IMG/VR virus record: IMGVR_UViG_3300037010_001702
Coordinates: 124,001 to 188,000 of that record
DNA: 64,000 nt
Reading direction: 5' to 3' (one strand)
In this document: positions 48,869-63,941 of the stretch, in pieces
Layout: the number at the start of each line of letters is the position of its first letter
Position numbering within the stretch: the stretch's first letter is position 1
The notes under the pieces: generated by a model
Databases searched by the model: none
Told to the model about the DNA's origin: nothing
The model's input: only the letters and a program-made list of their open reading frames with translations
Position numbers and translations under genes: made by a program

Positions 48869-49753
48869 ATGGCAGGAAATGAGCTCATTAAACGAGCATA
48901 TACGGAATCGGAATATACCCCCGAGCTTATTCAAGAGCTCGTAAGGTGTCAAAAGGACCCCGTCTACTTTATTAGAAAGTACGTCTGGCTCCAGCACCCA
49001 AAGCGCGGTAAAATTCTATTTGACTTGTATCCCTATCAAGAGGAGCTTATTCACGCGTGTGAGAACAATACCCGTGTTATCGCTCTTATCTCCCGTCAGA
49101 TGGGTAAGACGCAGACCATCTCCATGTACCTTTTGTGGTATGCGATGTTCCACCGAGATCAAACGATTGTCATCGCTTCTAAGAACAATAGCCACGCTAT
49201 GGAAATTATGGATCGTATCCGCTTCGCGTACGAAGAACTTCCGCACTGGCTAAAGGCAGGTTGTAAGTACTATAACAAGCACAACATTGAATTCGACAAT
49301 GGTTCCCGCATTAAGTCTGAAGCTACTACCGAAAAGACTGGTCGGGGATTGGCAATTTCAAAGCTTTACCTTGACGAATTGGCCTTCATCTCACCACGCG
49401 TTCAAACTGAAATGTGGCGCTCACTATCGCCAACTCTTTCAACTGGTGGTTCTGCTATCATCTCATCTACTCCTAATGGTGATACTGACCTGTTTGCTAC
49501 TCTTTGGCGTGGTGCTAAATCAGGTGAGAACAACTTCAAGCCAGTGTTCTTCCCGTGGCACCTTCACCCTGATCGCAAGGAAGAGTACATTAAGCAGATG
49601 CAGGGCGAACTTGGTCCTGTAGGTTTCCGACAGGAAGTTCTGTGTTGCTCAAGTTGGGCCTCTATAAATACTTCTATTGGTAAAACCACTTTAGAAGAAC
49701 TTTATGAATGCCTATTAGAAGGGCAAGAGCAGGTGTATCACATCAATGTTTGA
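48869..49753 (+). CDS. gp17: Terminase large subunit, N-terminal part plus 36-aa split IntN
   Basis: DPVYF, YPYQ, Walker A SRQMGKT, LYLDE, SSTPNG; then FRQEVL|CCSSWASINTSIGKTTLEELY (IntN starts at 49643). Confidence 0.93.
   Translation: MAGNELIKRAYTESEYTPELIQELVRCQKDPVYFIRKYVWLQHPKRGKILFDLYPYQEELIHACENNTRVIALISRQMGKTQTISMYLLWYAMFHRDQTIVIASKNNSHAMEIMDRIRFAYEELPHWLKAGCKYYNKHNIEFDNGSRIKSEATTEKTGRGLAISKLYLDELAFISPRVQTEMWRSLSPTLSTGGSAIISSTPNGDTDLFATLWRGAKSGENNFKPVFFPWHLHPDRKEEYIKQMQGELGPVGFRQEVLCCSSWASINTSIGKTTLEELYECLLEGQEQVYHINV
49663..49670 (+). promoter_or_regulatory. Late promoter TATAAATA inside IntN coding sequence
   Basis: Exact consensus overlapping codons S-I-N-T. Confidence 0.6.
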
Positions 49754-50238
49754 CACGAAGGATTACAACCTGACGACTGGGGGGCATTTCAAGCATGTGG
49801 TGACCCCAGGGCGCACCTCTTCCGCACTACGGAAAACTGGACTGCTTCTTCTGATAAGTATAGAAAACATTCGAAGAACATCCGAATGTTCTTGCAGCAA
49901 GAACTAAGATAATTCACGAAGCTAACTTAAAAGCAGGTGAGGATGGTTAACGGTTACAAGCGCACTGCAAAAGGACGAAATCTATGTTCTGACGCGTGTT
50001 GAAAACAAAAAGATTATAGAGTTCTATGGTAACTATTGGTATGCTTGCCTAAAAAGTACAGACCTGATGAAGTGGTAGGTTGTAAAGGCCAAACATCACG
50101 GCAAATCTGTGACGCGGATGCCACCAAGATCAAGTTGGCAGAAGATGCATGGTATCAAGTTAAGATAGTATAAGAACCGGAATACAAGAAAAACCTAAGA
50201 AGGTGGTAGATGAATGCATAGCATGGCTCAAACAATAA
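49700..50238 (+). pseudogene. Decayed Vsr-like homing endonuclease between the terL halves
   Basis: Fragments ENKKIIEFYGNYWYA / KKYRPDE..TSRQICDADATKIKLAEDAWYQVKIV*EPEYKKN / KVVDECIAWLKQ*, broken by stops and frameshifts; start approximate. Confidence 0.7.
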
Positions 50239-51353
50239 AGAACACAAAGGGCGTTAAAGTTCAAACTCCAACTGGGATGAAGAATTTTAGCGGTATGTCT
50301 AAAAGCTGGCATGAGCAAGTTGTTGAAATAGTATCAGCAACAAGAAAAATAACGTGCGGGATGAAGCATAAATTTCTTGTTGAGCCAGGTTGGGTTGATG
50401 CTGAGCACATTGAGCCGGGTATGTCATTTACGACAATTGATGGCAAGGATGATCCTATCCTTAGTGTTCAGGTTAAAAATGATCCACAGTGGTTGTATGA
50501 TCTACTTGATGTTGAGGGTGGTAGTGCCTACATAACAGAGGGGGTCATATCGCACAACTGTGAATTTATTTCATCAGACGCGCTGTTGATGGACTCACTT
50601 AAACTGTCCTACATTAAGGCCACACCTCCGGTTACCCAGAACATGGGCTTTAACTTCTGGCGAGAGTCAATAGGTGGGCGAGGTAAGACGTACTTAGTAG
50701 GTGTAGACCCGGCTACTGGTAACAGTAAGGACTTTACTGTCATTGAAGTTATCGAGTACCCGTCAATGGAGCAGGTGGCAGAATTCAGAAGCAACACCGT
50801 TCACATTCCACTGATCTATGCTAAGCTCAAGTGGTTGTTTAAGTTCCTTCATCAACCTGATCCAAACAGGGGTAGAGCTGAAATTATCTGGTCATTTGAG
50901 CGCAACGGTGTTGGTGAAGCTCTTGTTGCAATGATTCAAAATGACGACTCTATGGATGGTGGTATCTACCTTGACGGTGTTGAACTGTACAATGAGAGCT
51001 CAACCAGTCAGCGCCTTGGTTGCTACACTACTGGTAAGTCAAAGCTTCTTGCCTGTATGCAGCTTAAGAACCTTTTGGAAAAGGGAGATGGTATCAAGAT
51101 CAACTCAGAACACTTGCTATACGAGCTTCAGAACTTCGTGGCAGTTAATGGCACCTACCAAGCTAAGCAGGGTTGTACTGATGACACGATCATGGCAATG
51201 GCGGTTGTTATGAAGGTTCTCGGCAGACTCGCATCATACGATGACAAGGCAAGAAAGCTTGTGTATGAGTCAGTTGACCCGGACTCTGACAAGCTTCCGG
51301 AGGAAAACCCAGATCAATTTGGAGATGACTACGTTCCGTTTGCAATAGTCTGA
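50223..51353 (+). CDS. gp17: Split IntC (about 112 aa) plus terminase large subunit C-terminal nuclease part
   Basis: KVQTPTG.KNF.G, TCGMKHKF, LYDLLDV..YITEGVISHN|CEF; then YLVGVDPA.G..KDFT, ERNGVG, DD.IMA. Alternative start at 50214. Confidence 0.93.
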   Translation: MAQTIKNTKGVKVQTPTGMKNFSGMSKSWHEQVVEIVSATRKITCGMKHKFLVEPGWVDAEHIEPGMSFTTIDGKDDPILSVQVKNDPQWLYDLLDVEGGSAYITEGVISHNCEFISSDALLMDSLKLSYIKATPPVTQNMGFNFWRESIGGRGKTYLVGVDPATGNSKDFTVIEVIEYPSMEQVAEFRSNTVHIPLIYAKLKWLFKFLHQPDPNRGRAEIIWSFERNGVGEALVAMIQNDDSMDGGIYLDGVELYNESSTSQRLGCYTTGKSKLLACMQLKNLLEKGDGIKINSEHLLYELQNFVAVNGTYQAKQGCTDDTIMAMAVVMKVLGRLASYDDKARKLVYESVDPDSDKLPEENPDQFGDDYVPFAIV

Positions 51354-51426
51354 TAAATAGATTCAAGATCAGTAAGGCCGGAAAGCTGTTCTGAATTTTT
51401 AATGCGACCCGGCGCATGGAGTAAAA

Positions 51427-52770
51427 ATGTCAAATAATATCACTTGGACAAGTGGTGGTACAGAAGGTATTCTCGGGAAGTCAACAATTGTTCTTCCACC
51501 TAAGACCCTTAACCAATCTTCCACATCCCTATCCCTTACTGGCAAGGGGGTCTTCAACTATGGTGAGTATCAGCAGGAAAATTTCCTGCGCATCCTCGAA
51601 AGCTTTGCATCTGCAAACATACCAGCAAACCCAACGATAGGTCAAATTTGGTTTAACACGACTGAGAGCACTCTCTATGTCTGTGCCGACTCCCAAACCG
51701 TTCCAGCTACCATGCAGCAGTACCATATAAATGGTCGCTACGTTTGGCTTAAGGCTGGTAGCTCAACTGCAATTGGGGATATTTCTGTAGGTCTAGGCTA
51801 TATCCCAGCTCCACCCGTTGCAATCGCGTCCGATTCTCAGACAGCAATGTCAGTTGCTATTACGGGTGGCGGCACCCAAACAACTCTTCACATCAACAAG
51901 TCAGATGGTACGCACGATGGTTACCTAGCAGCTGCGGACTGGTCTCGCTTTGACACCGTGCAAAGCAAGTTTCCAACAACAAGCACTGGAACCATCATGG
52001 TGACTGATGGTGACACGATGACTGGGCCACTGATCCTCGCAGGTGATCCAACTAATTCAAATGGCGCTGCTACCAAAAATTACGTTGACAACCACAGTGT
52101 ATCGAGCATCATAGCTGGAAGTAACATTACGATTGACCACAGTCAGGGTAACGTAACTATTAGCGGTATGCCGGGAACGGTTACTAGTGTTACAGTTGGT
52201 GGTACAGCTGGCAGAATTACTGGTTCTGGAACGATTACATCATCAGGCTCAATCGCTCTTGACCTAGCAACTTCTGGAGTATCCGCTGGTTACTACGGAA
52301 TGGCAAACGTAAATGTTGACGCCTACGGTAGAATCACAAGCGCAGTTCCCGGCACTCTAACAGTTCAAGGTACTGGTGCTCTTAGTGGGGGCGGAACTAT
52401 TGGATCTGGTGGCACTGCTACCCTTGACATGGCAGTAATCCATGGCGGTGGTTACTTCACTAATGCGAGCGTTCAGCTTGACGGATATGGTAGAGTAATC
52501 GGGGCTTCTTCTGGCACAAATACAGCAACAGCTCCAAATAATAGTGGTGGTATTGGATCATGGGTTGTTCTTGGTAGCGGACCGAGTGGTGATGGCGTTC
52601 CAGCCCAACTACCCCCAGGTGGAACATGGGCTTACTTTGTGATGAATATCGTGGATGATGGTAACGTAACTGATATTGAAAGTCTCGCTGGTGTTGCGGC
52701 TGGTGGTACACTTCTGGTTGGTAGCGCTGTCTTCCACTCAGGTCAAGGATTTGCTTGGAGAATTGCATAA
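51427..52770 (+). CDS. Tail fibre protein
   Basis: GKG..NYGEYQQENFL.ILE.FA, PTIGQIWF, GDTMTGPL, AATKNYVD, VDAYGRITSA; GATAAATA at 51352. Confidence 0.8.
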   Translation: MSNNITWTSGGTEGILGKSTIVLPPKTLNQSSTSLSLTGKGVFNYGEYQQENFLRILESFASANIPANPTIGQIWFNTTESTLYVCADSQTVPATMQQYHINGRYVWLKAGSSTAIGDISVGLGYIPAPPVAIASDSQTAMSVAITGGGTQTTLHINKSDGTHDGYLAAADWSRFDTVQSKFPTTSTGTIMVTDGDTMTGPLILAGDPTNSNGAATKNYVDNHSVSSIIAGSNITIDHSQGNVTISGMPGTVTSVTVGGTAGRITGSGTITSSGSIALDLATSGVSAGYYGMANVNVDAYGRITSAVPGTLTVQGTGALSGGGTIGSGGTATLDMAVIHGGGYFTNASVQLDGYGRVIGASSGTNTATAPNNSGGIGSWVVLGSGPSGDGVPAQLPPGGTWAYFVMNIVDDGNVTDIESLAGVAAGGTLLVGSAVFHSGQGFAWRIA

Positions 52771-53168
52771 TGTCTAAACTAACCAATCTTGGATTTTCTG
52801 GTCCATACAACTTAAATGCTGATGGTAGCGTTAACGCAATCTTCAAAACCTACCCATATCACATTCATGAGACTGCTACTCCTGAAGCGTGGATGGCTCT
52901 TCAAGCAGATCTTGCTGACGCTTCTTCAGGAGTGGTTCTGGTTCCTTACGTAGAACCAGTTATTAATCCTGCTGAGCAGCTTCGCATTTTAAAGTCGGCA
53001 GCAAGTGCAGCTCTCAACCAATCTGACACTGTGGTTATCCGATGTGCAGAAGCCGGTGTGGCTGTTCCTCAGGACTGGAAGGACTATCGTTCAGCTCTTA
53101 GAGCGATTATCTCTGGAACAGCAATCGTTGCTCTTCCTGTAAAACCAGCCTATCCTGCTGGAACATAA
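52770..53168 (+). CDS. Tail fibre assembly chaperone
   Basis: C-terminal WKDYRSALRAI..LPVKP.YP; coupled to the fibre gene. Confidence 0.75.
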   Translation: MSKLTNLGFSGPYNLNADGSVNAIFKTYPYHIHETATPEAWMALQADLADASSGVVLVPYVEPVINPAEQLRILKSAASAALNQSDTVVIRCAEAGVAVPQDWKDYRSALRAIISGTAIVALPVKPAYPAGT

Positions 53169-53222
53169 GATTACTTTCGGTCTGACATTGTAATATAATC
53201 TAACTTAGATTAAGGATCAGAC

Positions 53223-53441
53223 ATGTACAAATTTGCAGGATATGGTATCAAGATTGGTGGCGACATTGCTCAATTCGCCCGCAACTTTGAAATTGCCACG
53301 ACGATTAAGCAGCAAAAACATTTAAACGATGATGCTGTTGTCATGCTTTACGTCTTTGAACAGCTCAAGGAAATGGCTCCTGTTAAAACGCAAACCGACG
53401 ATGCGATAGACCTTACAAAAGAAGATGATGGAACAAATTGA
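53223..53441 (+). CDS. Hypothetical protein
   Basis: AAGGA RBS; TATAAT at 53194. Confidence 0.6.
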   Translation: MYKFAGYGIKIGGDIAQFARNFEIATTIKQQKHLNDDAVVMLYVFEQLKEMAPVKTQTDDAIDLTKEDDGTN

Positions 53442-53736
53442 AGGATTTATGGTATTTTGGATCGATGTTACTGACATCGGTTCGCGTAGTGCATTTTTCA
53501 GCCACGAAGATTATGCTGACCCAATGGGTGAAGCGATGAAGCTTATGGCTGAACTTCGTATTGAACCTCAGAACCAATTTGTTACGATGGCATCACAGAA
53601 CAAGAATTCTGTCGGTAAGTCAGGAGTTGATTCCATTGTTGATGGGAAGACTCCAGACGGTTATGCATATGAATGGTCCAAGGCGGGAAGGGCCGGTAAA
53701 ATGAAGCGTTCTCGCCACGCTGCAAGTTCCAGTTAG
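53425..53736 (+). CDS. Hypothetical protein
   Basis: 103-aa ORF overlapping the upstream gene. Confidence 0.6.
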   Translation: MMEQIEGFMVFWIDVTDIGSRSAFFSHEDYADPMGEAMKLMAELRIEPQNQFVTMASQNKNSVGKSGVDSIVDGKTPDGYAYEWSKAGRAGKMKRSRHAASSS

Positions 53737-53913
53737 AACTGCAGATCCAGCAGCGATGTCAGAAATGCTAACTGATCCGACTATTTCTACCACTTTAGAG
53801 TTCAAGTTGTAACAGAGTAACATAAAAGTAACCTTAATTTGGTTACTTTGTTACACAAATAACTGTGTTCATTTATCAGGTTCTGTTGTATAATAACTTA
53901 TCAACGGAAACAA

Positions 53914-54228
53914 ATGATGAATCTGCCTTTTAACTTTATCGGTCATTGCTACTCTTCAGACAATTTCCTTTGGAGTAAGGAATACGGTCATTTCTCCGCC
54001 AATATTGCTGAAGTTCCCTCAGTTCTCCGTCAAATGTTCAATGATTCGATGGACCTTGGTTTCGCGATGCGTTCCTCGAAGACAGGCAGCATTGTTTACT
54101 TCACTCTTGAAGATGTTTTTCGTAACTCAGATGGTGATGTTATCCGATGGGATTTTGTTCCTACTGCTGCTACAGTGAATGCACATCCAGCATTACGTTC
54201 TGTTAAGGTTACCATCTATAACGACTGA
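53914..54228 (+). CDS. Hypothetical early protein
   Basis: TATAAT at 53889 upstream. Confidence 0.65.
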   Translation: MMNLPFNFIGHCYSSDNFLWSKEYGHFSANIAEVPSVLRQMFNDSMDLGFAMRSSKTGSIVYFTLEDVFRNSDGDVIRWDFVPTAATVNAHPALRSVKVTIYND

Positions 54229-54237
54229 AAGAGGAAA

Positions 54238-54678
54238 ATGGAATTCTCAGTTGAAGGAAGCGCCAAGAATAGCAAGTTTGCAAATGCTTTGATGCCCTCG
54301 ATTATCAAGCAACTCAAGATCGAAAACAGTGTTTCTGCGGTTTGTGTGATCATTGATGATGGCTTTGGTGACAATGAGGGTATTACGGTTAACATGGGTA
54401 TTAGTGGTGTTGATTGCATCTTGGTTGTGATCAAGCCCCAACTTCTTCGTGGCAATAAGTTCTTGATTGCTCACAAGGAACTCGCTTTGTCTTTAGCACA
54501 CGAGATGGTTCATGTAAAGCAATTGGTAAAGGGTCAGTTAAAGAGTATGGCTGATGGTTCTCAGACCTGGTTAGGAAAGAGTTATCCAGCAGATACACCA
54601 TATTTGGATCGTCCATGGGAGATTGAAGCATTCTCCCGTCAAGAATTGATTATGCGGCGGGCCATAGAATTGATGTGA
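54238..54678 (+). CDS. HExxH metallopeptidase-like protein
   Basis: LAHEMVHVKQ..G.L, PYLDRPWEIEA. Confidence 0.75.
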   Translation: MEFSVEGSAKNSKFANALMPSIIKQLKIENSVSAVCVIIDDGFGDNEGITVNMGISGVDCILVVIKPQLLRGNKFLIAHKELALSLAHEMVHVKQLVKGQLKSMADGSQTWLGKSYPADTPYLDRPWEIEAFSRQELIMRRAIELM

Positions 54679-54859
54679 TTACGAAAGTTCAAGATCGTTA
54701 TAAGCACCGCGAAAGTAAGGCACCAGTGGTTGAGGTTGAATTTGGCTATGACATGATTAATTATGCATTCCTCTGTGATGCTGGTAATGGTTTCATTTAC
54801 ACTGCTCCAATTGCCGATTTTCTCAAATAGTATACCACCTATGCTAAGGTGAAATGTAA

Positions 54860-55045
54860 ATGTGGACTCTTCTTCTAGTCATTCTGATAAATGGTGGAGA
54901 ACAAACTAAATTTGAAACCCACGTTTACCAAACAGAAGAGCAGTGTATAATAGCTCAACACAGGTTTGAAACAGCAAGTACTTATGGTTATTGCAAATTA
55001 ACAAAGGAAGAATCAGATGTGCATCACCACTTTTCTCCACGATAG
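54860..55045 (+). CDS. Small hypothetical protein (hydrophobic N-terminus)
   Basis: MWTLLLVILI; two Cys. Confidence 0.5.
   Translation: MWTLLLVILINGGEQTKFETHVYQTEEQCIIAQHRFETASTYGYCKLTKEESDVHHHFSPR
54923..54951 (+). promoter_or_regulatory. Early-type promoter GTTTACC...TATAAT
   Basis: Same architecture as 7424, 56138 and 57826. Confidence 0.5.
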
Positions 55046-55358
55046 TGAATTGAATGTTCCTACCTCTAATGAGGAGTTGAACAAGATATTAAAGACTGTT
55101 CGTGATGAGACCAAAGAAGATTGGCAGGTTATCGAACGCTCTTATGTTCAACGTAAGATTTTCAAGAAGCCTGTTGTTGTAAAGTATTTTGAACTTTACA
55201 AGTGGATTGGCGGATTCGGTCCTTGGCAGTTGATAAACTTTTATCGGGCCAATTCCGAAACATCAATCAATACTGAGAATTCTGCAGATGTCGTGGTATC
55301 GTTTCTGATGGGAATTCGTTCTGGCTTTTATACTAAAGGTGCAAAAAATGCAAGTTGA
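55017..55358 (+). CDS. Hypothetical protein
   Basis: AAGGA RBS; 113 aa. Confidence 0.6.
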   Translation: MCITTFLHDSELNVPTSNEELNKILKTVRDETKEDWQVIERSYVQRKIFKKPVVVKYFELYKWIGGFGPWQLINFYRANSETSINTENSADVVVSFLMGIRSGFYTKGAKNAS

Positions 55359-55677
55359 TCAAATCAAGACCCAAATCGAACTAGCTCTTCAAGCTGCACG
55401 GGCTGCAGCTCAAAAGATGATCAATGATAATCCAGATGTCTGGTATCCTTGCGGTTTTGCATGGGTAAAGATTCGTCCAGCTCGTGGTCCAGTTGTAAAG
55501 GCTCTCAAAGAGATGGGTCTTGGAAAGGTAGATAGCTACGCTGGCGGATACATGGTTTATAACCCAAGTGGTAATGCTACTCAATGGATGGATGCAAAGA
55601 TTGAAGGGGCCCGTGCTTTTGCTGGTGTGCTCAAGAAGATGGGAGTCAATGCAACTGTACAATCTAGAATTGATTGA
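55348..55677 (+). CDS. Hypothetical phage protein
   Basis: CGFAWV..K..GARAFA.VL...SRID. Confidence 0.65.
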   Translation: MQVDQIKTQIELALQAARAAAQKMINDNPDVWYPCGFAWVKIRPARGPVVKALKEMGLGKVDSYAGGYMVYNPSGNATQWMDAKIEGARAFAGVLKKMGVNATVQSRID

Positions 55678-56167: not shown

Positions 56168-56182
56168 GGAATTTTGGAGATA

Positions 56183-56791
56183 ATGTTGTCTGATGTACAA
56201 GAACGTTTCGATGCTTTCTTTAAGCGTTTTCGAATGACTCAAATGTGGCGCGACATGGTTAACACTCGTGAAGATAGCACATGGCATCGTGAAGAGAACG
56301 TGTCAGTGCATACGCGCATGTTGCTGGATTGGTACAAAGATAACCTGTTCAACTATCGTAATGATGTGCAGCGTGTTTTGACAATGGTAGCCTGTCTGTT
56401 TCATGATGTGGGTAAGCCACCAGCTCAAGTGGTAAAGACCTCTGCCGAGCGTGGTGAGTATCGTTCCTACCATGGTCATGAGCAATTGTCTGCTCGCATG
56501 TGGATAGATTATGCGATGTCTAACCAAGAGATGGTAAAGGAAACCCTGAGACTGTCCAACTTAGATATCTCCAACATAGCGCTGATGATCGAGTATCACG
56601 TTCCATTTATGCTGAAGGATAAGAAGAAGCGTAAGGCTCTAAAGGAATCTCTGATTAATCGAATGGGTAATGCTGGGCATCAAGCGTGGCTGGATATGCT
56701 GCTGTGTGATACCCATGGCCGTAACTCTGATGATCAAGCTGAAAATCTGGCCGCTGTAGATGCCTGGATGAAGGGCTGGGAAATAGTATAA
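56183..56791 (+). CDS. HD-domain phosphohydrolase
   Basis: WHRE.NV.VHT, LFHDVGKP, YHGHE..SA, IEYH, CD..GR. Confidence 0.85.
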   Translation: MLSDVQERFDAFFKRFRMTQMWRDMVNTREDSTWHREENVSVHTRMLLDWYKDNLFNYRNDVQRVLTMVACLFHDVGKPPAQVVKTSAERGEYRSYHGHEQLSARMWIDYAMSNQEMVKETLRLSNLDISNIALMIEYHVPFMLKDKKKRKALKESLINRMGNAGHQAWLDMLLCDTHGRNSDDQAENLAAVDAWMKGWEIV

Positions 56792-56962: not shown

Positions 56963-57523
56963 ATGGCTAAGGTTTGTTTTGTCATGGTTGGTGTATCTGG
57001 TTCGGGCAAGTCCACGACCATATCGCGCATCAAGAAGATTGCTGGTGATGGACTACACATGGTCTTCTCCCTGGATAACTGTCGTATTCGTTTCCTGATG
57101 TCAAAGACTGGAATGGTTTCTGACCTGGATGATGAGAAGTCCATCTACGAGATGGCTTTCCAACATGCAAATGATAATCAGAAGGAGTTCGACGCATTCG
57201 TAAATGAATTGTGGGCTAAGTGCCTGGCTGCAGATATTCTGTTTGTCGACAACATGAACCTGACTCGTAAGTCTCGGGCTCGTTGGATTCAAGATGCACG
57301 TTCGAAGAAGTTTGCGATTTGGGGTGTTGAGATGATGACTCCTCTGGATACCATCCTCTCTCGTCAGTCAACTCGTACTGATAAGACTGTGCCTGAATCT
57401 ATGGTACGTGATATGTACATGCGCCAGCAATCTCTGATGGTTGGTGATGAAGTAGATTTTCTGGTTGTTGTAGACGGCTCCAAAGATCGAACAGCAACTG
57501 AAAGGTATCCTGTTCCGGGCTGA
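56963..57523 (+). CDS. Polynucleotide-kinase-like P-loop protein (AAA_33)
   Basis: MVGVSGSGKST, FSLD..R, VDNMNL..KSR, R...R.DK.VP. Confidence 0.8.
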   Translation: MAKVCFVMVGVSGSGKSTTISRIKKIAGDGLHMVFSLDNCRIRFLMSKTGMVSDLDDEKSIYEMAFQHANDNQKEFDAFVNELWAKCLAADILFVDNMNLTRKSRARWIQDARSKKFAIWGVEMMTPLDTILSRQSTRTDKTVPESMVRDMYMRQQSLMVGDEVDFLVVVDGSKDRTATERYPVPG

Positions 57524-57825
57524 TTGATATCCTGAACACTCCAAATCCTATTACTAAAACGGTGTACCTGGATGTGTTCAAAGACAAGGGTTACTACTCT
57601 AAAAGCAGCCTCATTACAAGTGGAGCTTTGCTCATACTCCTGCTGAGGCTATGTAATATGCAACTGAAAAGCGGGTACTAGAGCAAAGTGGGGTAATTCT
57701 GCATTGTCAAATTTGCTCGTCAAGGCTGAAACAAAGTCACCAATACTTCTGAAACTTGGCGAGAAGAAAGCAGCACAGGGACCCATCGAGAAGATCACTC
57801 TGACTTCTTTAATTGCAAAATAAGA

Positions 57826-57855
57826 GTTTACTACACCGCCAGCGCAGTGTATAAT
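57826..57855 (+). promoter_or_regulatory. Early-type promoter GTTTACT-N17-TATAAT
   Basis: Upstream of gp32; a late TATAAATA box also lies at 57965-57972. Confidence 0.65.
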
Positions 57856-58033
57856 AACCTTTACAGACAATGCAATGTTGTCTAGATGATGACTTTGTTC
57901 AAGAGTTCTTCTTGAACCACCCATGATGAATTTAATGTCTTAACTACATACTGGTTGAGCGTACTATAAATATTTTGTGCAATTCAATTGCACAGTTTAT
58001 TTTACTTTGATTTTTAATTTTTAGGAGAAATTT

Positions 58034-58909
58034 ATGTCCAGCGCAAAAAACAAACTTGAAGCTCTAAAGAGCGCCTTTGATAAGAAGGCCTCCACTACAG
58101 GTGGAGGCGACCAATCTTGGAAGCTTAAGTATCCCTTCTGGAAAATGCCAGATGACTCTACAGCAGTTGTTCGTTTCCTCCCCGACCTTGACGACGAAAA
58201 CAGCCTCGGATTCCTTGTTGAAAATCTTCAGCACGAGTTGATTATTAATGGGCAGAAAAAGACTGTTCCTTGCCTTTCCATGTATGGTGAAGATTGCCCA
58301 ATCTGTGCTCTTTCACGTAAGTACTACGATGAGAAGAATGAAGAGATGGGTAAGAAGTATTACCGCAAGAAGTCCTACATCGGACAGGTAATTGTTATCG
58401 AGTCCCCAATTGAACATGACCAATCTCAACTTGTTAAGTTGATCGAATTTGGACCAGCAGTGTTCAAACAAATCCAAGCTGCATTCCAGTCTGGAGACTT
58501 GGAAGTACCTCCTTACGAGCTTAAGGGTGGATACAACTTCCGCATCAAGAAGACAAAGAATGGTCAGTACGCTTCTTACACCACATCCAGCTTTGCTCCT
58601 AAGCAATCTGATTTGGAAGATGAGATTCTTGAAGCCATCAATCTTTACAACCTTGCTGACTACCGTGGTGCCAAGATGGACCGTGCTACAGTTGAAGCTC
58701 TGCTTACAGCAGACCAAACTGGTGCAGCATTCAAGGAAAGTAGTCATGATGAAGATGAAGCTCCTGCTGCAAAGCCAGCTCTAGTAGCTAAGCAAGCTCC
58801 AGCACCTACTCCTGTAGAAGAGGAAGCACCTACACCAGCTAAGACTGGTTCTGTCCTTGAACAACTCAAGGCTCGCGCTAAAGCTAAAGCAGCAGCTGAA
58901 GCTCAGTAA
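58034..58909 (+). CDS. gp32: Single-stranded DNA-binding protein gp32
   Basis: VRFLPD, CL..YGEDCPIC, FG..VFKQI, GYNFRIKK, Y.SY..S.F; T-rich leader. Confidence 0.9.
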   Translation: MSSAKNKLEALKSAFDKKASTTGGGDQSWKLKYPFWKMPDDSTAVVRFLPDLDDENSLGFLVENLQHELIINGQKKTVPCLSMYGEDCPICALSRKYYDEKNEEMGKKYYRKKSYIGQVIVIESPIEHDQSQLVKLIEFGPAVFKQIQAAFQSGDLEVPPYELKGGYNFRIKKTKNGQYASYTTSSFAPKQSDLEDEILEAINLYNLADYRGAKMDRATVEALLTADQTGAAFKESSHDEDEAPAAKPALVAKQAPAPTPVEEEAPTPAKTGSVLEQLKARAKAKAAAEAQ

Positions 58910-58919
58910 TCCACAAATA

Positions 58920-58959
58920 GGAATGCTTGGGGGATAATTACCCTCCAGCATTTCCTTTC
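58920..58959 (+). terminator. Putative terminator/hairpin after gp32
   Basis: GGAATGCTTGGGGG..CCCTCCAGCATTTCCTTTC. Confidence 0.5.
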
Positions 58960-58971
58960 ACGAGGAAAAAT

Positions 58972-60048
58972 ATGGCCGGATTATCATTTCTAAAAGATTT
59001 CCAAAAGGCTGCTAAGAAAATCAGTACGATCTCTATTGGGGTTCGACAGGTTAATGAGTGGCTTTCATCTGGAAATTATGCATTAAACTACTCGCTCACT
59101 GGCGACTGGAATAAATTTGTACCACTTGGCCGCTCTACAGCTCTTGTAGGCCCATCTGGTTCAGGCAAATCATTTCTAGCAACCTCTGCTATTCGTGAGG
59201 CACAGCGATCGGGCTGGCACGTATTGCTTCTTGATTCTGAAAATGCTCTTGACATTACTTATCTTCAAAAGATTGGTGTTAAGATTGACGAAGACTCAAT
59301 GACGTATGTCAAGGTCACCATGATTGAAGATGTGAACCAAGTTCTCTCTGAGTTCTTTAGTTCATACATCAAGAGCTATGGCACTAATAATTATGATGCC
59401 CCTCGTGTTCTTATTGTTATTGATTCTTTGGCTATGCTTGCATCTACCACTGAATTGGAAAACTATGAACGCGACGGCACTGTTAAAGGTGACCTTGGTC
59501 AGCTAGCAAAACGTCGTAAGGCAATGTTGAAGATGCTTCATGGCAAAATTGCAATGCTTCCAATGGCACTCGTGTTTACCGACCACGTCTACCCGCAAGA
59601 CATCATGATGGGAGATGGCGCATGGGCAATGACTAACAGCGTTAAGTTCTTCCCGTCTATTACTGCTTTGGCTACCAAGCTTAAGTTGAGGGAAGGTACT
59701 GACATTGTCGGTATCAGAATGCGAGTTGAAACATACAAATCGCGCTTTGCGAAAATCGGAAGTAAAGTTGAACTTGAACTTCCATACAGCACTGGATTAT
59801 CTCCATTCTCTGGTCTAGCAGAGCTTTTGGAAGATCTTGGTGTGATTACAAAATCTGATGTTCCTGGTAAGAAACAGGGATGGATGATGTCCGTTGGGCC
59901 TATTGATGGTGAAACATATTTCTTTAAGCCTGACAACATGACGCACGAAGATGCAGCAAAGCTCTTCAAGCACCCTAAGGCACAACCAACAATTGCAGCA
60001 GATGAGATGCCAGAACTTCCTGATCTCGATGCTGAAGAAGGAGAATAA
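58972..60048 (+). CDS. uvsX: RecA-like recombinase UvsX
   Basis: SSGNYALN, GPSGSGKS, LDSENA, IVIDSLAML, KSRF. Confidence 0.93.
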   Translation: MAGLSFLKDFQKAAKKISTISIGVRQVNEWLSSGNYALNYSLTGDWNKFVPLGRSTALVGPSGSGKSFLATSAIREAQRSGWHVLLLDSENALDITYLQKIGVKIDEDSMTYVKVTMIEDVNQVLSEFFSSYIKSYGTNNYDAPRVLIVIDSLAMLASTTELENYERDGTVKGDLGQLAKRRKAMLKMLHGKIAMLPMALVFTDHVYPQDIMMGDGAWAMTNSVKFFPSITALATKLKLREGTDIVGIRMRVETYKSRFAKIGSKVELELPYSTGLSPFSGLAELLEDLGVITKSDVPGKKQGWMMSVGPIDGETYFFKPDNMTHEDAAKLFKHPKAQPTIAADEMPELPDLDAEEGE

Positions 60049-60049
60049 C

Positions 60050-60250
60050 ATGGCAAAAAATACATACGGTGAATCAATCACAATCGAAATCGTTTCAGGC
60101 GGTTTCATTCTTACTTACCCAGTTAAGAGCGATCAAGCATCTGACTCTTATGACAGCGCTCAACGTGAAGTATTTGCTTCACCCCGCAAACTAAATAAGA
60201 AAATCCAAGAGGTTATCAAGGACATTGGGCTTGTAGCTGACGAAGACTAA
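60050..60250 (+). CDS. Hypothetical protein
   Basis: GGAG RBS; 66 aa. Confidence 0.7.
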   Translation: MAKNTYGESITIEIVSGGFILTYPVKSDQASDSYDSAQREVFASPRKLNKKIQEVIKDIGLVADED

Positions 60251-60262
60251 GTAACCAAACCA

Positions 60263-60288
60263 GGAGAGGGCTAAATTTAGCCCTCTCC
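60263..60288. terminator. Perfect 26-bp palindrome, probable terminator
   Basis: GGAGAGGGCTAAA/TTTAGCCCTCTCC followed by CTTTC. Confidence 0.7.
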
Positions 60289-60295
60289 CTTTCAA

Positions 60296-60583
60296 ATGAA
60301 TAATTTTTTGACGTATTGCGCTCTAGCAAAATTCAAACATCTAATTGAGTCTACGCCCGGGTGTGTAGCTGTTGCTCTCACTGCTGGTAAAGGTGGTGGG
60401 TTTGAAATAGAATTTTTGTTTTCTTCCGGGTCAAAGAGTGATATAATGATCTCTAATTCACCCAGAGTCTTTACTGATGTTCCAACCCTTCAACTCATGA
60501 AGGAAGATTCAGTAGATTTCAGTTATGATTCAGGGGAATTCATAATAACAAAGGATTCAAATGTCATTCCTGCTTTTGCTTGA
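60296..60583 (+). CDS. IscA/HesB-like fold protein lacking conserved cysteines
   Basis: VALTAGKGGGFEIEFLF..VFTD..TLQLM..SVDF..F.I resembles IscA GGCSGF..VD..SL..VD. Confidence 0.5.
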   Translation: MNNFLTYCALAKFKHLIESTPGCVAVALTAGKGGGFEIEFLFSSGSKSDIMISNSPRVFTDVPTLQLMKEDSVDFSYDSGEFIITKDSNVIPAFA

Positions 60584-61022
60584 AGAAGATAAATTAGGCG
60601 CGGTGTTGGATAGATTACCGGCCTATGAAAAGAAACTTCAAGACGCTGAGCCAATCTTCAAATTAGAAGGCAGACGTCTTGAAGAGATTGCTAGAACACT
60701 TCCACACTATCAGGCCTCTTATGATCAAACTCTTCAAGAGTTGAGAGCTCTTGAAGAGTGGTTGAACAATTTAAAAGAGAAACGTGTTGCTAAATACTGG
60801 AAAAAGTATCTGGAAGGTTATCAGCGCACACTTACCTCTCGCGATATCCAAGCATACATTGCTGGCGAAAAAGAAATTGTTGAGCTCAATCAAATCATCA
60901 TTGAAGTTGCTCTTATGAAGAGTAACGCTTTATCTATTGTAGAGGCTATTAAGAATCTTGGATGGATGGTAGGTCATATAACTAAATTGAGAGTTGCAGA
61001 AATGCAAGATGCTGTACTATGA
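60561..61022 (+). CDS. uvsY: Recombination mediator UvsY
   Basis: KKYLE.Y.R.LTSRDI..YI.GE, GW.VG.I.KLRVA; lies between uvsX and uvsW. Confidence 0.85.
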   Translation: MSFLLLLEEDKLGAVLDRLPAYEKKLQDAEPIFKLEGRRLEEIARTLPHYQASYDQTLQELRALEEWLNNLKEKRVAKYWKKYLEGYQRTLTSRDIQAYIAGEKEIVELNQIIIEVALMKSNALSIVEAIKNLGWMVGHITKLRVAEMQDAVL

Positions 61023-61161
61023 ACACACCAGGATTTACAGGAAAATTTAAAGTTGATGAAGATCTTCTTAGCTAGATTGCTGGTCTAGAAGATAAAGAGT
61101 TGTCAAAGTATTCATACACTTTTGCTGCATAACACAAACTAGAACGGCACTTCTAAATCAC

Positions 61162-62220
61162 ATGAAATGTATTCTGCGAATAACCGATGAAGTATGGTGC
61201 CAGATATCTGGTATAATGCCTGGGCATGTAGAGACATTAGTAAAAGCATTTTCTGTTCACCCAGAAGGTTATTTTTTTATGCCTGCCTTCAAGCTTGGGA
61301 GATGGAACGGATATATCCAATTTTATTCTCCAACAGGTAAGACCTATGTCCGTCTATTAGATCAGGTTATCCCTTACTTAGAGAAGTGGGGATATGACAT
61401 TGAGCTGATAGATAATCGAAAGTACTTTGAACCTCCTGTAGTTGGCGGTAAGCTTTTGACTATTGACCCTGCGGGCATTGCTCTCACTGCTTCTGGGACT
61501 AACATAATGGGCGATGATGTTGTCGTTGGCGGAAAGGTATTCAATCTCCGCCCATACCAATTACAGTGTGTTCAGATTGCTGTAGAGAATGGAAGTGGTT
61601 TCATTATCGCAGGAACTGGTGCAGGCAAAACCTCCATCACAGGTGCTCTCTCCTACTACTATGCCAATGCCGGCTATAAAGTAATCACGATTGTTCCATC
61701 CGGTGATCTTGTAGACCAAACAGCTGAGTGGTATGAACTCCTAGGTCTAGATGTAGGCACCTATTCTGGTACAGAGAAGGACCTTGACCACATGCACATC
61801 GTTGCAACGTGGCAGGCAGTACAGTATAATCCTACAATCATGCATGACTTTCAATGTCTGATTTGGGATGAGTGTTTTTGTGGTGAGACTCCTGTATTGA
61901 TGTCTGACATGACGGAAAAGAAAATAAAAGACGTTCGGGTCGGTGATTATGTTTTATCAATGGACGCAAACGGAAATTTCGAGCCTTGTAAAGTGTTAAA
62001 AACTCACATTAATTTACCAAAATCTAAGGTAAAAATGCTTCGGCTAACGTTTGATAATGGACGTTATTTAGATGTTACCGAAAATCATATTTTCTATCTA
62101 AAAGATGGTAGAAAGGTTATGGCAAAAGATTTAACTGAGCGTGATGATATATGTGAATTCTCCTTAAATAAAATGAAAGCTCATGGAGATAAAGTGAATG
62201 AAGAAGAAAATCATAAATGA
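61162..62220 (+). CDS. uvsW: UvsW helicase N-terminal part plus split IntN (115 aa)
   Basis: LRPYQ, GTGAGKT, ATWQ, IWDE|CFCGETPVLM (IntN starts at 61873), block B VTENHIF. Confidence 0.93.
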   Translation: MKCILRITDEVWCQISGIMPGHVETLVKAFSVHPEGYFFMPAFKLGRWNGYIQFYSPTGKTYVRLLDQVIPYLEKWGYDIELIDNRKYFEPPVVGGKLLTIDPAGIALTASGTNIMGDDVVVGGKVFNLRPYQLQCVQIAVENGSGFIIAGTGAGKTSITGALSYYYANAGYKVITIVPSGDLVDQTAEWYELLGLDVGTYSGTEKDLDHMHIVATWQAVQYNPTIMHDFQCLIWDECFCGETPVLMSDMTEKKIKDVRVGDYVLSMDANGNFEPCKVLKTHINLPKSKVKMLRLTFDNGRYLDVTENHIFYLKDGRKVMAKDLTERDDICEFSLNKMKAHGDKVNEEENHK

Positions 62221-63115
62221 TTTACTAGGAGATGAATTTTTAATAGATATTAAGTTTTTACCTAGAACCGGATCAGTCAGATTGCCTTTTGATTCAGCTG
62301 TATTTTCATGTGGTCGCAAGCTTAATAAAAAAGAGTTTGGTAAATTTTATAGACTATTAATGCAAGGTCATCTTGAAGAAGCTAGGACTTTTGTAGCAGC
62401 TCCACAAGAATTTGAAAAATTAAACAAACAACGAAGGCAGATTGCTGCTTCTAAAGGTGGTAGGGCTGCCATGTTAGATCCGAAAAATTATGTTTGTAAT
62501 AAAAATGGTACGCATTGGAATAGAGGGACAGTTGGATTAGTTAAGGCATGGAACAAAGGATTAACTAAAAATACTGATGTTCGATGCAAAAACATCTCTA
62601 TCGCTAAAATGGGAGCAAAAAACCCAATGTATGGTAGACCAGTATCAGCTTTAACGCGTGAAAAGTTATCATTAAAAGCAAAGCAAAATATTGAATCAGG
62701 TAAATGGACCCCTAATACGTTTAATTCTAGAACAAGAAAGCAACTTAAATTTAGAGATAAACTTTTCAGAAGTAGCTGGGAGGCTCTTTTTTATCAAGCA
62801 TTTCCACAAGCAGAATACGAAAAGATTAGAATACCGTATTTTACTGATAAGCATCACGTTTACATTACCGATTTTAAAGTTGGTAATGTAATTTATGAAA
62901 TAAAACCTGAGAAGTACGTAAAATTAAAACAACCCATTCTTGATATAGTAGCACGCTGGTGTGTTAGCAATGGATTTGAATTTGTTATATTAACTGAATT
63001 TTCTTTAACAGAACTAATACCAAAACACACTGTTAATTTTAGTGAATTTGATGAAAATACTGAAAAACTATTAAGAGGATTATATGCATCTGTTGAAAAA
63101 AGAAGAAATAGATAA
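62198..63115 (+). mobile_element. Free-standing endonuclease (NUMOD-like plus PD-(D/E)XK) between the uvsW halves
   Basis: AWNKGL, KNPMYG, FRSSWE, YE..RIPY, Y.TDF, YEIKP; AT-rich; GGAG RBS. Confidence 0.8.
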
Positions 63116-63941
63116 GCCAGAAAAAGTTTATGATTTAACTGTTGATAAACACCACAACTATATTGTTAATGGTGCTGTTGTTTCGAATTGTCACGGTATC
63201 AAAGCTACTGTTGCGCAGAAACTTGTCAATGATAATGGTAAGCACATTGCATTCCGCTTTGGCGTAACAGGAACATTCCCTAAACCAGAGTCTGAAAAGC
63301 TTTCTCTTATTACTTCAATTGGGCCTATCCTCAAAGAGATTCCTGCTGCGTGGTTAATTGACCATGGTTATCTTGCTAAGGTTCAGATTCAGCCTGTTGA
63401 ATTGAATGAGAGTTATATCGATGAAGACTTTCCTGACTATGCTGCTGAGAAATCCTTCTTAGCTAAGAGCACTAATCGAATGGAGATCATTGCTGATTTG
63501 ATCATCTCTCAATGTGCAGCGCATGGCAATACTCTTGTCCTGGTTAACTCTATTCCATTTGGTGAAAAGTTAGCTAAGCTGATTAAGGGTGCTGTCTTTC
63601 TTTATGGCGAATCACCAAAAGACTTGCGCCGCGAACATTATGATATGTTTGAAGAGAATGATGATATAATAGTAATAGCCTCAGCAGGTATTGCTTCAAC
63701 AGGCCTCTCGATTGACCGTATTTTCTGTATGATGTTTGTAGATGCAGGTAAATCCTTCATCAAAGCTATTCAATCAGTAGGGCGCGGTCTTCGTATTGGA
63801 CATGACAAAGATTCTGTTATGGTTGTCGATGTTCACTCTAAACTAAAATGGGCAGTGAGGCACTTTAAGGAACGAGTGAAGCACTACAAAGAAGCTGGAT
63901 ACCCAATAAACAAGAAACAAACTTTGAAAGTAAAAGGTTAA
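63084..63941 (+). CDS. uvsW: Split IntC (35 aa) plus UvsW helicase C-terminal part
   Basis: VYDLTV..HNYIVNGAVVSN|CHG; RFGVTGT, STGLSI, IQSVGRGLR. Confidence 0.93.
   Translation: MHLLKKEEIDKPEKVYDLTVDKHHNYIVNGAVVSNCHGIKATVAQKLVNDNGKHIAFRFGVTGTFPKPESEKLSLITSIGPILKEIPAAWLIDHGYLAKVQIQPVELNESYIDEDFPDYAAEKSFLAKSTNRMEIIADLIISQCAAHGNTLVLVNSIPFGEKLAKLIKGAVFLYGESPKDLRREHYDMFEENDDIIVIASAGIASTGLSIDRIFCMMFVDAGKSFIKAIQSVGRGLRIGHDKDSVMVVDVHSKLKWAVRHFKERVKHYKEAGYPINKKQTLKVKG

What the first reader, a model, noticed from the sequence alone, without database searches (positions are those of the whole stretch)
49643..63188. Two differently split inteins in one phage imply an orthogonal pair
TerL (36 + about 112 aa) and UvsW (115 + 35 aa) inteins are split at opposite ends of the Hint fold, and both use Cys1 and Cys+1. 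They are probably present in the same cell late in infection, so cross-splicing should be disfavoured. They are a candidate natural orthogonal pair for three-piece protein ligation.
Basis: inference. Interest (0 to 1): 0.6.

Follow-up and report, generated by a model that had tools for sequence, protein, structure and literature searches.

The report
Two of five split inteins in one phage
A large uncultured phage from sediment and microbial-mat samples carries its terminase and UvsW helicase genes in two pieces each, joined at protein level by split inteins of known kinds; the phage has five such genes in all, and whether the inteins cross-react is untested.

Summary
TerL is encoded as two ORFs carrying a 36-aa N-intein and a 112-115-aa C-intein (atypical split). 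UvsW is encoded as two ORFs carrying a 115-aa N-intein and a 35-aa C-intein (canonical split). Both use Cys1 and Cys+1. Related phages have uninterrupted alleles in which the last N-extein residue abuts the first C-extein residue in frame, which fixes all four junctions.

Both loci are "fractured genes" in the sense of Dassa et al. 2009. The UvsW halves flank an intact free-standing endonuclease gene. The 460-nt TerL spacer is the frameshifted remnant of a Vsr-like endonuclease that is intact in relatives. The TerL intein belongs to the known family of atypically split TerL inteins (AceL-TerL, GOS-TerL, Cat): it matches CatC at E=6.5e-8.

The 239-kb phage record holds five split inteins: a second atypical one with Ser1/Thr+1 in a P-loop ATPase, and canonical ones in RNA ligase 1 and NrdA.

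Orthogonality of TerL and UvsW is very likely, because one cross pair would be an incomplete fold and the overlapping parts are unrelated. It is untested, generic to unrelated inteins, and no new principle. Verdict: real, new members of known kinds, moderate to low interest.

The parts
48806..48813 (+). TATAAATA motif (same sequence as T4 late promoters) 55 nt upstream of the TerL-N start codon
   Evidence: 8 matches in the window against 2.5 expected; 2 of 100 shuffles reach 8. One search shows the sequence context. This is weak, motif-only evidence.
48869..49642 (+). TerL N-extein (258 aa, ATPase domain), ending ...FRQEVL
   Evidence: Pfam Terminase_6N E=4.7e-14. It is collinear with the uninterrupted TerL of L010-L016 up to residue 258.
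49643..49753 (+). TerL N-intein: 36 codons plus stop; Cys1; conserved core about 25 aa
   Evidence: Absent from intein-less alleles. Relatives L114, L117 and L115 have IntN of 29, 25 and 34 aa sharing C-x5-6-INTSIG-x2-(T/S)-(L/M)-E-x-LY.
49754..50213 (+). Spacer: decayed remnant of a Vsr-like free-standing homing endonuclease gene
   Evidence: blastx against the intact 332-347-aa endonucleases that sit between the TerL halves in L114, L117 and L115. The matching pieces are collinear, lie in three frames and reach E=7.8e-15. About 115 codons are deleted, YWHA has become YWYA, and there is an in-frame stop. The RBS AAGGTGG for TerL-C lies at its 3' end.
50214..50558 (+). TerL C-intein (115 aa; 112 from the second ATG), containing blocks B, F and G and ending HN
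   Evidence: PDB sequence search: CatC 6dsl_B E=6.5e-8, VidaL 6vgv E=5.5e-4. Pfam Intein_splicing E=2.4e-5, below the curated cut-off. TIGR01443 20.8 bits, above its cut-off. There are 19 relatives at 47-86% identity; in the 16 aligned, H52, D96, H114, N115 and C+1 are invariant.
50559..51353 (+). TerL C-extein (264 aa, nuclease domain), starting CEFISS
   Evidence: Pfam Terminase_6C E=0.0049, below the curated cut-off. tblastn against jumbo-phage terminases at 29-40% identity. Junction shown.
61162..61872 (+). UvsW N-extein (237 aa), ending at helicase motif II ...LIWDE
   Evidence: Pfam ResIII E=1.3e-10, DEAD E=5.6e-6, UvsW_N E=1.7e-4. It lies next to gp32, UvsX and UvsY genes. Junction with intein-less alleles.
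61873..62220 (+). UvsW N-intein: 115 codons plus stop; Cys1; block B TENH
   Evidence: Pfam Hint E=5e-11. TIGR01445 26.1 bits, above its cut-off. PDB matches to the hedgehog Hint domain and the gp41-1 intein. Relatives at 88% and 65% identity.
62198..63115 (+). Intact free-standing endonuclease gene (305 aa; NUMOD3 plus a TnsA-like PD-(D/E)xK nuclease). It overlaps the IntN tail by 23 nt and the IntC head by 32 nt.
   Evidence: Pfam Tn7_TnsA-like_N E=1.5e-5 and NUMOD3 E=0.0033. PHROG 'endonuclease' E=5.9e-22. Reduced to its last 56 codons in relative L021. GC 0.318 against 0.40-0.44 in the exteins.
63084..63188 (+). UvsW C-intein (35 aa), ending ...VVSN with a penultimate Ser
   Evidence: Pfam Intein_splicing E=2.2e-5. 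TIGR01443 36.7 bits. AVVSN|CHG is invariant in 8 family members. RBS AAGAGGA lies 5 nt upstream.
63189..63941 (+). UvsW C-extein (250 aa), starting CHG (completing motif II DE-CH), with the helicase C-terminal domain
   Evidence: Pfam Helicase_C E=1.4e-7. Junction: three intein-less alleles have AHG and one has CHG.

Best explanation
Both loci are fractured genes, in which a homing-endonuclease insertion has broken an intein into two separately translated pieces.

Mechanism (inferred from class 1 intein chemistry; not assayed):
1. Each half-protein is made on its own ribosome-binding site.
2. The intein fragments associate non-covalently into a Hint fold.
3. The standard reaction follows: N-S acyl shift at Cys1, trans-thioesterification to Cys+1, Asn cyclisation, then S-N shift.
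4. The products are full-length TerL (ATPase joined to nuclease at ...FRQEVL-CEF...) and full-length UvsW (helicase motif II restored as DE-CH).

The two elements are at different stages of the homing cycle.
- The UvsW element is young and probably still mobile. Its endonuclease gene is intact, it is AT-rich, and it is far less diverged from its copy in another phage than the host gene is.
- The TerL element is old and immobilised. Its endonuclease has decayed to a 460-nt remnant, its GC content has drifted to the genome average, and it has been lost from close relatives.

The pair is part of a set of five split inteins in this phage: two atypically split and three canonically split. The TerL and UvsW fragments almost certainly do not cross-splice. 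This follows from the geometry of the fold for one cross pair and from sequence divergence for the other. It was not measured.
For: Shown by tool results:
- ORF structure and lengths.
- Exact junctions from intein-less alleles.
- Family assignments.
- Conservation of catalytic residues and of the split-ORF architecture: 16 aligned TerL-C relatives of 19 found, and 7 UvsW-C relatives.
- Intact endonuclease genes between the TerL halves in relatives, and a collinear decayed remnant in the window.
- UvsW intein synonymous divergence dS 0.23-0.36, against a saturated extein pS of 0.77, in window versus L021. Relative P0028 is 73% identical in the IntC region but only 41% identical over the whole C-half protein.
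- GC content of each part.
- Intein-less TerL alleles nest inside an intein-bearing clade with support 100/99.
- Identical sequence in independent assemblies.
- Five inteins in the genome, with all junctions checked.
- Negligible similarity between the TerL and UvsW intein fragments.

From the literature:
- The fractured-gene model and the atypically split terminase intein: PMC2677866.
- GOS-TerL is 37+115 aa and AceL-TerL is 25+104 aa: PMC11766414.
Against: - No splicing was measured, and there is no RNA or protein evidence. All four runs holding the sequence are DNA.
- The UvsW intein lacks the usual penultimate His (it ends SN). The TerL block B has Gly where most inteins have Thr. Both are conserved in their families, but either could mean slow or condition-dependent splicing.
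- The complex prediction for TerL IntN with IntC gave no verdict.
- Timing of expression is unknown.
- Pinto et al. 2020 found that residual cross-reactivity, where it occurred, mostly involved fragments split at atypical sites.
Confidence: 0.82

Rival explanations
1. The intein fragments no longer splice. They serve only as non-covalent docking domains that hold the two halves of TerL (or UvsW) together, as in the fragmented NrdA of Aeromonas phage Aeh1.
For: Gene-in-pieces enzymes assembled without splicing exist in phages (PMC3045599, listed). The UvsW intein lacks the penultimate His. The TerL endonuclease is dead, so the element is no longer selected for mobility.
Against: Residues needed only for catalysis are invariant. 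In the TerL family these are Cys1, the block B His, the block F Asp and the terminal His-Asn, across members down to 47% identity. In the UvsW family the terminal Asn and Cys1 are invariant. A docking-only role would not maintain the terminal Asn or Cys1.
Confidence: 0.07
2. The co-resident inteins are not fully orthogonal. Some cross-association or cross-splicing occurs and is tolerated. The likeliest cases are between the two atypically split inteins (TerL and the P-loop ATPase) or between the RNA ligase and NrdA C-inteins.
For: TerL-IntC and ATPase-IntC are homologous: 28 of 105 residues identical, phmmer E about 4e-4. The RNA ligase and NrdA IntC are 42-44% identical and share the ...GILVHN end. 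In Pinto et al. 2020 residual cross-talk mostly involved atypical splits. GOS-TerL and AceL-TerL N-fragments are interchangeable (PMC11766414).
Against: The two short IntN fragments share no detectable similarity. The RNA ligase and NrdA inteins have opposite net charges: N -9 / C +3 against N +3 / C -8. For TerL against UvsW specifically, one cross pair lacks about 80 residues of the fold and the other has unrelated overlapping segments. Chimeras of essential proteins would be costly.
Confidence: 0.12
3. The split genes are broken genes in a defective or mis-assembled genome, and have no function.
For: The record is a metagenome assembly estimated 67% complete. No isolate or host is known.
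Against: The arrangement is identical in two further IMG/VR records and in contigs of four runs. The same split architecture is conserved in many diverged relatives with intact reading frames and their own ribosome-binding sites. TerL is indispensable for a tailed phage.
Confidence: 0.02

Closest known systems
Atypically split TerL inteins: GOS-TerL (37+115 aa), AceL-TerL (25+104 aa) and their consensus Cat (PDB 6DSL)
   Same: - The host protein is the phage large terminase.
- The N-fragment is short and the C-fragment is long and carries blocks B, F and G. The 36+115 aa sizes are almost the same as GOS-TerL.
- The IntC matches CatC at E=6.5e-8 over nearly its full length.
- A Vsr-like free-standing endonuclease sits between the halves in relatives, as in the terminase locus of Dassa et al. 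2009.
   Different: - It has Cys1/Cys+1, like AceL-TerL, whereas GOS-TerL has Ser1/Cys+1.
- Identity to the Cat consensus is only moderate (35.8 bits).
- The endonuclease here has decayed.
Fractured genes (Dassa, London, Stoddard, Schueler-Furman, Pietrokovski 2009, PMC2677866)
   Same: A conserved DNA-metabolism or packaging gene is broken at an active-site motif. The intein halves lie on the two gene pieces, and a free-standing endonuclease gene lies between them. The origin is phage. All five loci of this genome fit this description.
   Different: - UvsW, RNA ligase 1 and the P-loop ATPase are not among the eight hosts listed in that paper.
- The UvsW endonuclease is of the TnsA-like PD-(D/E)xK + NUMOD3 type, not GIY-YIG or Vsr-like.
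- Here five loci are seen together on one genome. The 2009 data were short fragments.
Canonical naturally split phage inteins gp41-1, gp41-8, NrdJ-1 and IMPDH-1, and published orthogonal intein sets
   Same: The UvsW intein is split at the endonuclease insertion site (115+35 aa) and resembles gp41-1 at E=1.8e-4. The published set is mutually orthogonal (PMC11766414; PMC7090010).
   Different: - The UvsW intein ends in Ser-Asn, not His-Asn.
- Nothing is known of its activity or kinetics.
- The published sets were assembled from unrelated sources. They are not known to share one cell.

Membership tests
Class 1 intein (Hint fold), TerL element | Nucleophile at position 1 and at +1, and a terminal Asn | tested here: met
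   Cys1 (CCSSW...)...SHN, then Cys+1 (CEF). Invariant across the 16 aligned C-half relatives and 3 N-half relatives.
Class 1 intein (Hint fold), TerL element | Block B His and block F Asp present and conserved | tested here: met
   H52 and D96 of the IntC are invariant. H52 aligns with the block B His of CatC. The usual Thr three residues before this His is Gly here.
Class 1 intein (Hint fold), TerL and UvsW elements | Precise in-frame insertion relative to uninterrupted alleles of the host gene | tested here: met
   TerL: L010-L016 and L018. UvsW: L022-L025.
Class 1 intein (Hint fold), UvsW element | Cys1, block B TxxH, terminal (H)N, and a nucleophile at +1 | tested here: met
   CFCGET..., TENH...VVSN|C. 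The penultimate residue is Ser, not His, and is invariant in 8 sequences. This is a known tolerated deviation, but it is a difference.
Split intein (trans-splicing) | The N- and C-parts lie on separate ORFs, each with its own stop or start codon and ribosome-binding site | tested here: met
   Stops at 49751-49753 and 62218-62220. Starts at 50214 and 63084 are preceded by AAGGTGG and AAGAGGA. The same architecture is seen in relatives.
Split intein (trans-splicing) | The fragments associate and splice in trans | not testable with these tools
   This needs an expression assay. The one complex prediction gave no verdict and is not used as evidence.
Atypically split TerL intein family (AceL-TerL, GOS-TerL, Cat) | Sequence homology of the long C-fragment | tested here: met
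   phmmer against PDB: CatC 6dsl_B E=6.5e-8 covering query residues 10-114; VidaL E=5.5e-4.
Atypically split TerL intein family (AceL-TerL, GOS-TerL, Cat) | Split after about 25-37 residues, with block B on the C-fragment | tested here: met
   IntN is 36 aa (25-34 in relatives). Blocks B, F and G are all in the IntC.
Atypically split TerL intein family (AceL-TerL, GOS-TerL, Cat) | Same insertion point in TerL (allelic inteins) | not tested
   The GOS-TerL and AceL-TerL extein sequences were not obtainable: the paper is not held and no supplement text is held.
Fractured gene (Dassa et al. 2009) | A free-standing homing endonuclease gene lies between the two intein-bearing gene halves | tested here: met
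   UvsW has an intact 305-aa endonuclease ORF. TerL has a decayed remnant here and an intact gene in L114, L117 and L115.
Orthogonal split-intein pair | Both cognate pairs are active and neither cross pair gives product | not testable with these tools
   There are only indirect arguments. The 36+35 aa cross pair lacks block B, and the overlapping 115-aa fragments are unrelated.

The most novel reading that the evidence does not exclude
This phage carries a naturally co-evolved, mutually orthogonal set of five active split inteins. On this reading, cross-talk is avoided in three ways: by split-site geometry (atypical against canonical), by complete divergence of the two short N-fragments within the atypical family, and by opposite charge patterns among the canonical ones (RNA ligase N-/C+ against NrdA N+/C-). 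The set includes an atypically split intein with Ser1/Thr+1, a class for which very few usable examples exist. It would be the first orthogonal multi-intein toolkit drawn from a single cell context, and evidence that selection against chimeric splicing shapes intein fragments.
Probability: 0.3. Interest if true: 0.55.

Novelty: new member of a known kind. Interest (0 to 1): 0.33.

Why it matters
For phage biology, this is a clean natural series of the homing cycle within one genome and its relatives. The UvsW element is young and still carries its endonuclease. The TerL element is old and its endonuclease is a wreck. A sister phage contig (IMGVR_UViG_3300045971_000121) has no intein at TerL, UvsW or NrdA.

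For protein engineering, it offers new sequences of useful kinds:
- a Cys1/Cys+1 atypically split intein whose conserved N-fragment core is only about 25 residues;
- a canonical intein with an unusual Ser-Asn end;
- outside the window, an atypically split Ser1/Thr+1 intein.

Cysteine-independent split inteins are still scarce (PMC10189870; PMC12707363). Such pairs and schemes already exist.

Tried and rejected
- Complex prediction of TerL IntN (with 5 extein residues) and TerL IntC (with 5 extein residues) gave no verdict. The score was 0.58, but one control scored 0.39. I do not use it as evidence either way.
- Megablast of the whole region against 50,697 phage records found nothing.
- Rfam and tRNA scans of the window found nothing, so there is no sign of a group I intron in either gap.
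- A PDB sequence search with the 36-aa TerL IntN found nothing.
- A metagenome-contig scan with the TerL IntC gave one weak partial hit. The word-based protein search was needed to find the family.
- The primary GOS-TerL paper and the Dassa supplement could not be read, so I could not test whether the insertion site is shared with the published TerL inteins.
- Sigma-70 promoter and terminator scans around TerL were at chance level.
- I considered whether the two ORFs at 56174-56791 and 56963-57523 are another fractured gene. There are several stops and no intein signal between them, so they are probably just two adjacent genes.
- I did not build or search the joined (spliced) TerL or UvsW proteins. 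All halves were searched separately, by reference.

Full report
**1. What is in the sequence**

The window is bases 124,001-188,000 of a 239,441-bp IMG/VR virus record, estimated 67% complete. It encodes:
- portal, major head, tail sheath and tail tube proteins;
- a large terminase;
- a T4-like recombination block of gp32, UvsX, UvsY and UvsW.

The nearest cultured terminases are those of jumbo myoviruses, at 29-40% identity. Four sequencing runs, from sediment and microbial mat, hold the TerL region. Their contigs cover it with no difference. Two further IMG/VR records carry it at 100% identity. These runs and records may include the source sample, so they are not fully independent. Together with the conserved architecture in diverged relatives (section 3), they still exclude an assembly artefact.

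**2. The two loci and their boundaries**

*TerL.* ORF 48869-49753 is the terminase ATPase domain (Terminase_6N, E=4.7e-14), followed by 36 residues that begin Cys-Cys-Ser and end at a stop. ORF 50214-51353 begins with 115 residues ending ...Ser-His-Asn (112 from the second ATG). It then continues as Cys-Glu-Phe and the nuclease domain.

*UvsW.* ORF 61162-62220 ends its helicase part at ...LIWDE and continues with a 115-residue Hint N-terminal region (Pfam Hint, E=5e-11). ORF 63084-63941 begins with 35 residues ending ...Val-Ser-Asn and continues as Cys-His-Gly, which restores motif II as DE-CH.

*Test of the boundaries.* I searched the N-extein, both intein fragments and the C-extein separately against related IMG/VR loci.
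- In seven TerL relatives (74-94% identical) and one more distant one, N-extein residue 258 is followed directly, in frame, by C-extein residue 1. The junction reads ...RQEVL|CEFISS....
- In four UvsW relatives, residue 237 is followed directly by residue 1. Three read DE|AHG and one reads DE|CHG.

I never built or searched the joined proteins.

**3. Evidence that both inteins function**

*TerL.* The word-based protein search with the IntC region found 19 relatives at 47-86% identity. All are 348-384 aa, which is the same 'IntC plus C-extein' ORF. In the alignment of 16 of them, these residues are invariant:
- the block B His (H52);
- the block F Asp (D96);
- the terminal His-Asn and Cys+1.

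In three relatives whose context I fetched, the N-half ends with an IntN of 25-34 aa that keeps Cys1 and a motif approximating C-x5-6-INTSIG-x2-(T/S)-(L/M)-E-x-LY. The functional N-fragment core is therefore about 25 residues. The last 10 or so residues of the window's 36 are a variable tail.

*UvsW.* Seven relatives of the C-half keep ...AVVSN|CHG invariant. Two relatives of the N-half keep Cys1 and TENH. The penultimate Ser, where most inteins have His, is thus a stable family trait and not decay.

Splicing itself was not and cannot be shown here. The single complex prediction gave no verdict.

**4. What lies between the halves**

*UvsW.* There is an intact 305-aa ORF (62198-63115) with NUMOD3 and TnsA-like PD-(D/E)xK signatures and a PHROG 'endonuclease' match at E=5.9e-22. 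It overlaps both intein fragments by a few codons. In relative L021 the same split intein is present (IntN 88% identical, IntC 97%), but the endonuclease is reduced to its last 56 codons.

*TerL.* The 460-nt spacer has no long ORF. In relatives L114, L117 and L115 the same position holds an intact 332-347-aa Vsr-like endonuclease. blastx of the window spacer against these gives collinear pieces in three frames, with E-values down to 7.8e-15. About 115 codons are deleted, the motif YWHA has changed to YWYA, and there is an in-frame stop.

Both loci therefore match the fractured-gene arrangement of Dassa et al. 2009. That paper already reported one terminase intein 'fractured at an unusual point' with a 122-residue C-part (PMC2677866).

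**5. The two elements differ in age**

| Measure | UvsW element | TerL element |
|---|---|---|
| GC of intein and endonuclease parts | 0.30-0.33 | IntC 0.417, spacer 0.43 |
| GC of exteins | 0.40-0.44 | 0.46 |
| Endonuclease gene | intact | decayed |

The genome GC is 0.424.

- Between the window and L021, synonymous divergence is 0.23-0.36 in the UvsW intein, but saturated in the C-extein (pS 0.77).
- Relative P0028 is 73% identical in the IntC region but only 41% identical over the whole C-half protein. The UvsW element has therefore moved between diverged UvsW genes.
- In a maximum-likelihood tree of TerL C-exteins, four intein-less alleles sit with the window inside an intein-bearing clade, with support 100/99. 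The simplest reading is precise loss in close relatives.
- One sister contig (IMGVR_UViG_3300045971_000121) is intein-free at TerL, UvsW and NrdA.

**6. The pair is part of a set of five**

Profile searches of the whole record found three more split inteins. ORF reading and Pfam scans describe them.

| Host gene | Record coordinates | Split | Residue 1 / +1 | Endonuclease between halves |
|---|---|---|---|---|
| P-loop ATPase | about 20.7-23.7 kb | atypical, 33 + 137 aa, inserted in the Walker A motif | Ser / Thr | intact, Vsr-like |
| T4-type RNA ligase 1 | about 70.5-73.1 kb | canonical, 99 + 34 aa, inserted after KRDG | Cys / Ser | intact, on the opposite strand |
| NrdA | about 189.7-193.3 kb | canonical, 105 + 33 aa, inserted before the ...NL-C-TEI Cys | Cys / Cys | intact, GIY-YIG |

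Intein-less alleles confirm all three junctions. A custom profile built from the five C-termini found no sixth intein.

**7. Orthogonality**

For TerL against UvsW:
- The cross pair IntN(TerL, 36 aa) + IntC(UvsW, 35 aa) totals 71 residues and lacks block B and the centre of the fold. It cannot form a Hint domain.
- The cross pair IntN(UvsW, 115 aa) + IntC(TerL, 115 aa) has redundant central segments with no significant similarity (best local alignment 5 of 10 residues).

I therefore think cross-splicing is very unlikely, but this is inference. It is also the usual outcome for unrelated inteins. Pinto et al. found 15 of 16 orthogonal, with residual cross-talk mostly among atypical splits or overlapping fragments of the same intein (PMC7090010).

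The more informative comparisons lie inside the set of five:
- The two atypical IntCs are homologous (27% identity), yet their short IntNs are unrelated.
- The RNA ligase and NrdA IntCs are 42-44% identical but carry opposite net charges: N -9 / C +3 against N +3 / C -8. UvsW is near neutral.

A charge difference between split inteins was tested as a source of orthogonality by Beyer et al. It worked for the engineered NpuDnaB mini-intein, but it did not account for the cross-activity of NpuDnaE on its own (bioRxiv 10.1101/546465). Whether it acts here is a hypothesis.

The claim that both proteins are present late in infection is unverified. TATAAATA, the sequence of T4 late promoters, is somewhat enriched in the window (8 matches against 2.5 expected). 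It lies 55 nt upstream of TerL-N and also upstream of gp32, but not upstream of UvsW-N.

**8. Comparison with what is known, and verdict**

The TerL intein is a new member of the atypically split TerL intein family:
- it matches CatC at E=6.5e-8 and VidaL at E=5.5e-4;
- its fragment sizes are nearly those of GOS-TerL, and its nucleophiles are those of AceL-TerL.

I could not test whether the insertion site is the same. The UvsW intein is a canonical phage split intein, distantly like gp41-1. In the searchable library I found no report of an intein in UvsW, which is weak evidence of novelty as a host.

Phages with several inteins are known, for example Campylobacter phage IBB_35. Split inteins in jumbo phages are also known, for example MIJ3 PolB. 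Three-segment ligation with orthogonal inteins, and the use of different split sites for it, are established.

Overall:
- The finding is a new member of a known kind.
- Its modest added value is the co-residence of five split inteins in one genome, including two atypical ones, one of them with Ser1/Thr+1.

Noticed in passing
Outside the window: G000:C1:20669-23709 (locus L030:669-3706): A third fractured gene: a P-loop ATPase of unknown family (PHROG 1250, no Pfam match) split in its Walker A motif (..AGKGG | TGKT..). The intein is atypically split, with Ser1 and Thr+1 (IntN 33 aa, IntC 137 aa), and an intact 351-aa Vsr-like (DUF559) endonuclease lies between the halves. Intein-less alleles confirm the junction. 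Its catalytic residues are cysteine-independent, a rare and sought-after type.
   Followed up: partly
Outside the window: G000:C1:70529-73142 (L031) and G000:C1:189715-193259 (L032): Two more canonical split inteins. One is in T4-type RNA ligase 1, inserted after KRDG, with Ser+1 and an endonuclease on the opposite strand. The other is in NrdA, inserted before the catalytic-site Cys of ..NL-C-TEI.., with a GIY-YIG endonuclease. Their C-fragments are 42-44% identical but have opposite net charge.
   Followed up: partly
L017:1562-4846 (IMGVR_UViG_3300002220_001052): The TerL of another phage is broken at a different site, the Walker A motif (..ARQSGK | T..). The break is made by another atypically split intein (IntN about 38 aa, long IntC ending SHN, Thr+1) with an intact 405-aa Vsr-like endonuclease between the halves. 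Atypical splitting therefore recurs at two TerL sites.
   Followed up: partly
L122:3210-3590 (IMGVR_UViG_3300027983_000058): A contiguous mini-intein, not split and without an endonuclease, that is 52-64% identical to the two fragments of this phage's RNA ligase split intein. It would be a natural cis-splicing counterpart.
   Followed up: no
L010, L022 and L128 (all from IMGVR_UViG_3300045971_000121): A sister phage contig, 85-95% identical in TerL, UvsW and NrdA, has no intein at any of the three loci. It is a natural intein-minus comparator and a likely homing target.
   Followed up: partly
window 56174-56791 and 56963-57523 (+): Two adjacent same-frame ORFs match the N-half and the C-half of one PHROG family (phrog_6931). 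The first resembles tRNA nucleotidyltransferase and the second a polynucleotide kinase. The 171-nt gap has several stops and no intein signal, so these are probably two genes that are fused in other phages.
   Followed up: partly
window 11662, 22227, 24235, 44052, 48806, 49663, 57965 (+) and 14046 (-): TATAAATA, the sequence of T4 late promoters, occurs 8 times against 2.5 expected, 7 of them on the coding strand. Sites include upstream of TerL-N and gp32, and one inside the TerL IntN coding sequence.
   Followed up: partly
window 51427-52770 and G000:C1:68767-70125: Two paralogous tail-fibre-like proteins (447 and 452 aa) share an N-terminus (..SGGTEGILGKSTI..). One lies directly downstream of TerL-C and the other directly upstream of the fractured RNA ligase gene.
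   Followed up: no
G000:C1:23765-24595 (L030:3765-4592): A further free-standing NUMOD3-containing endonuclease-like ORF lies directly downstream of the ATPase C-half. The genome is rich in homing-endonuclease genes.
   Followed up: no
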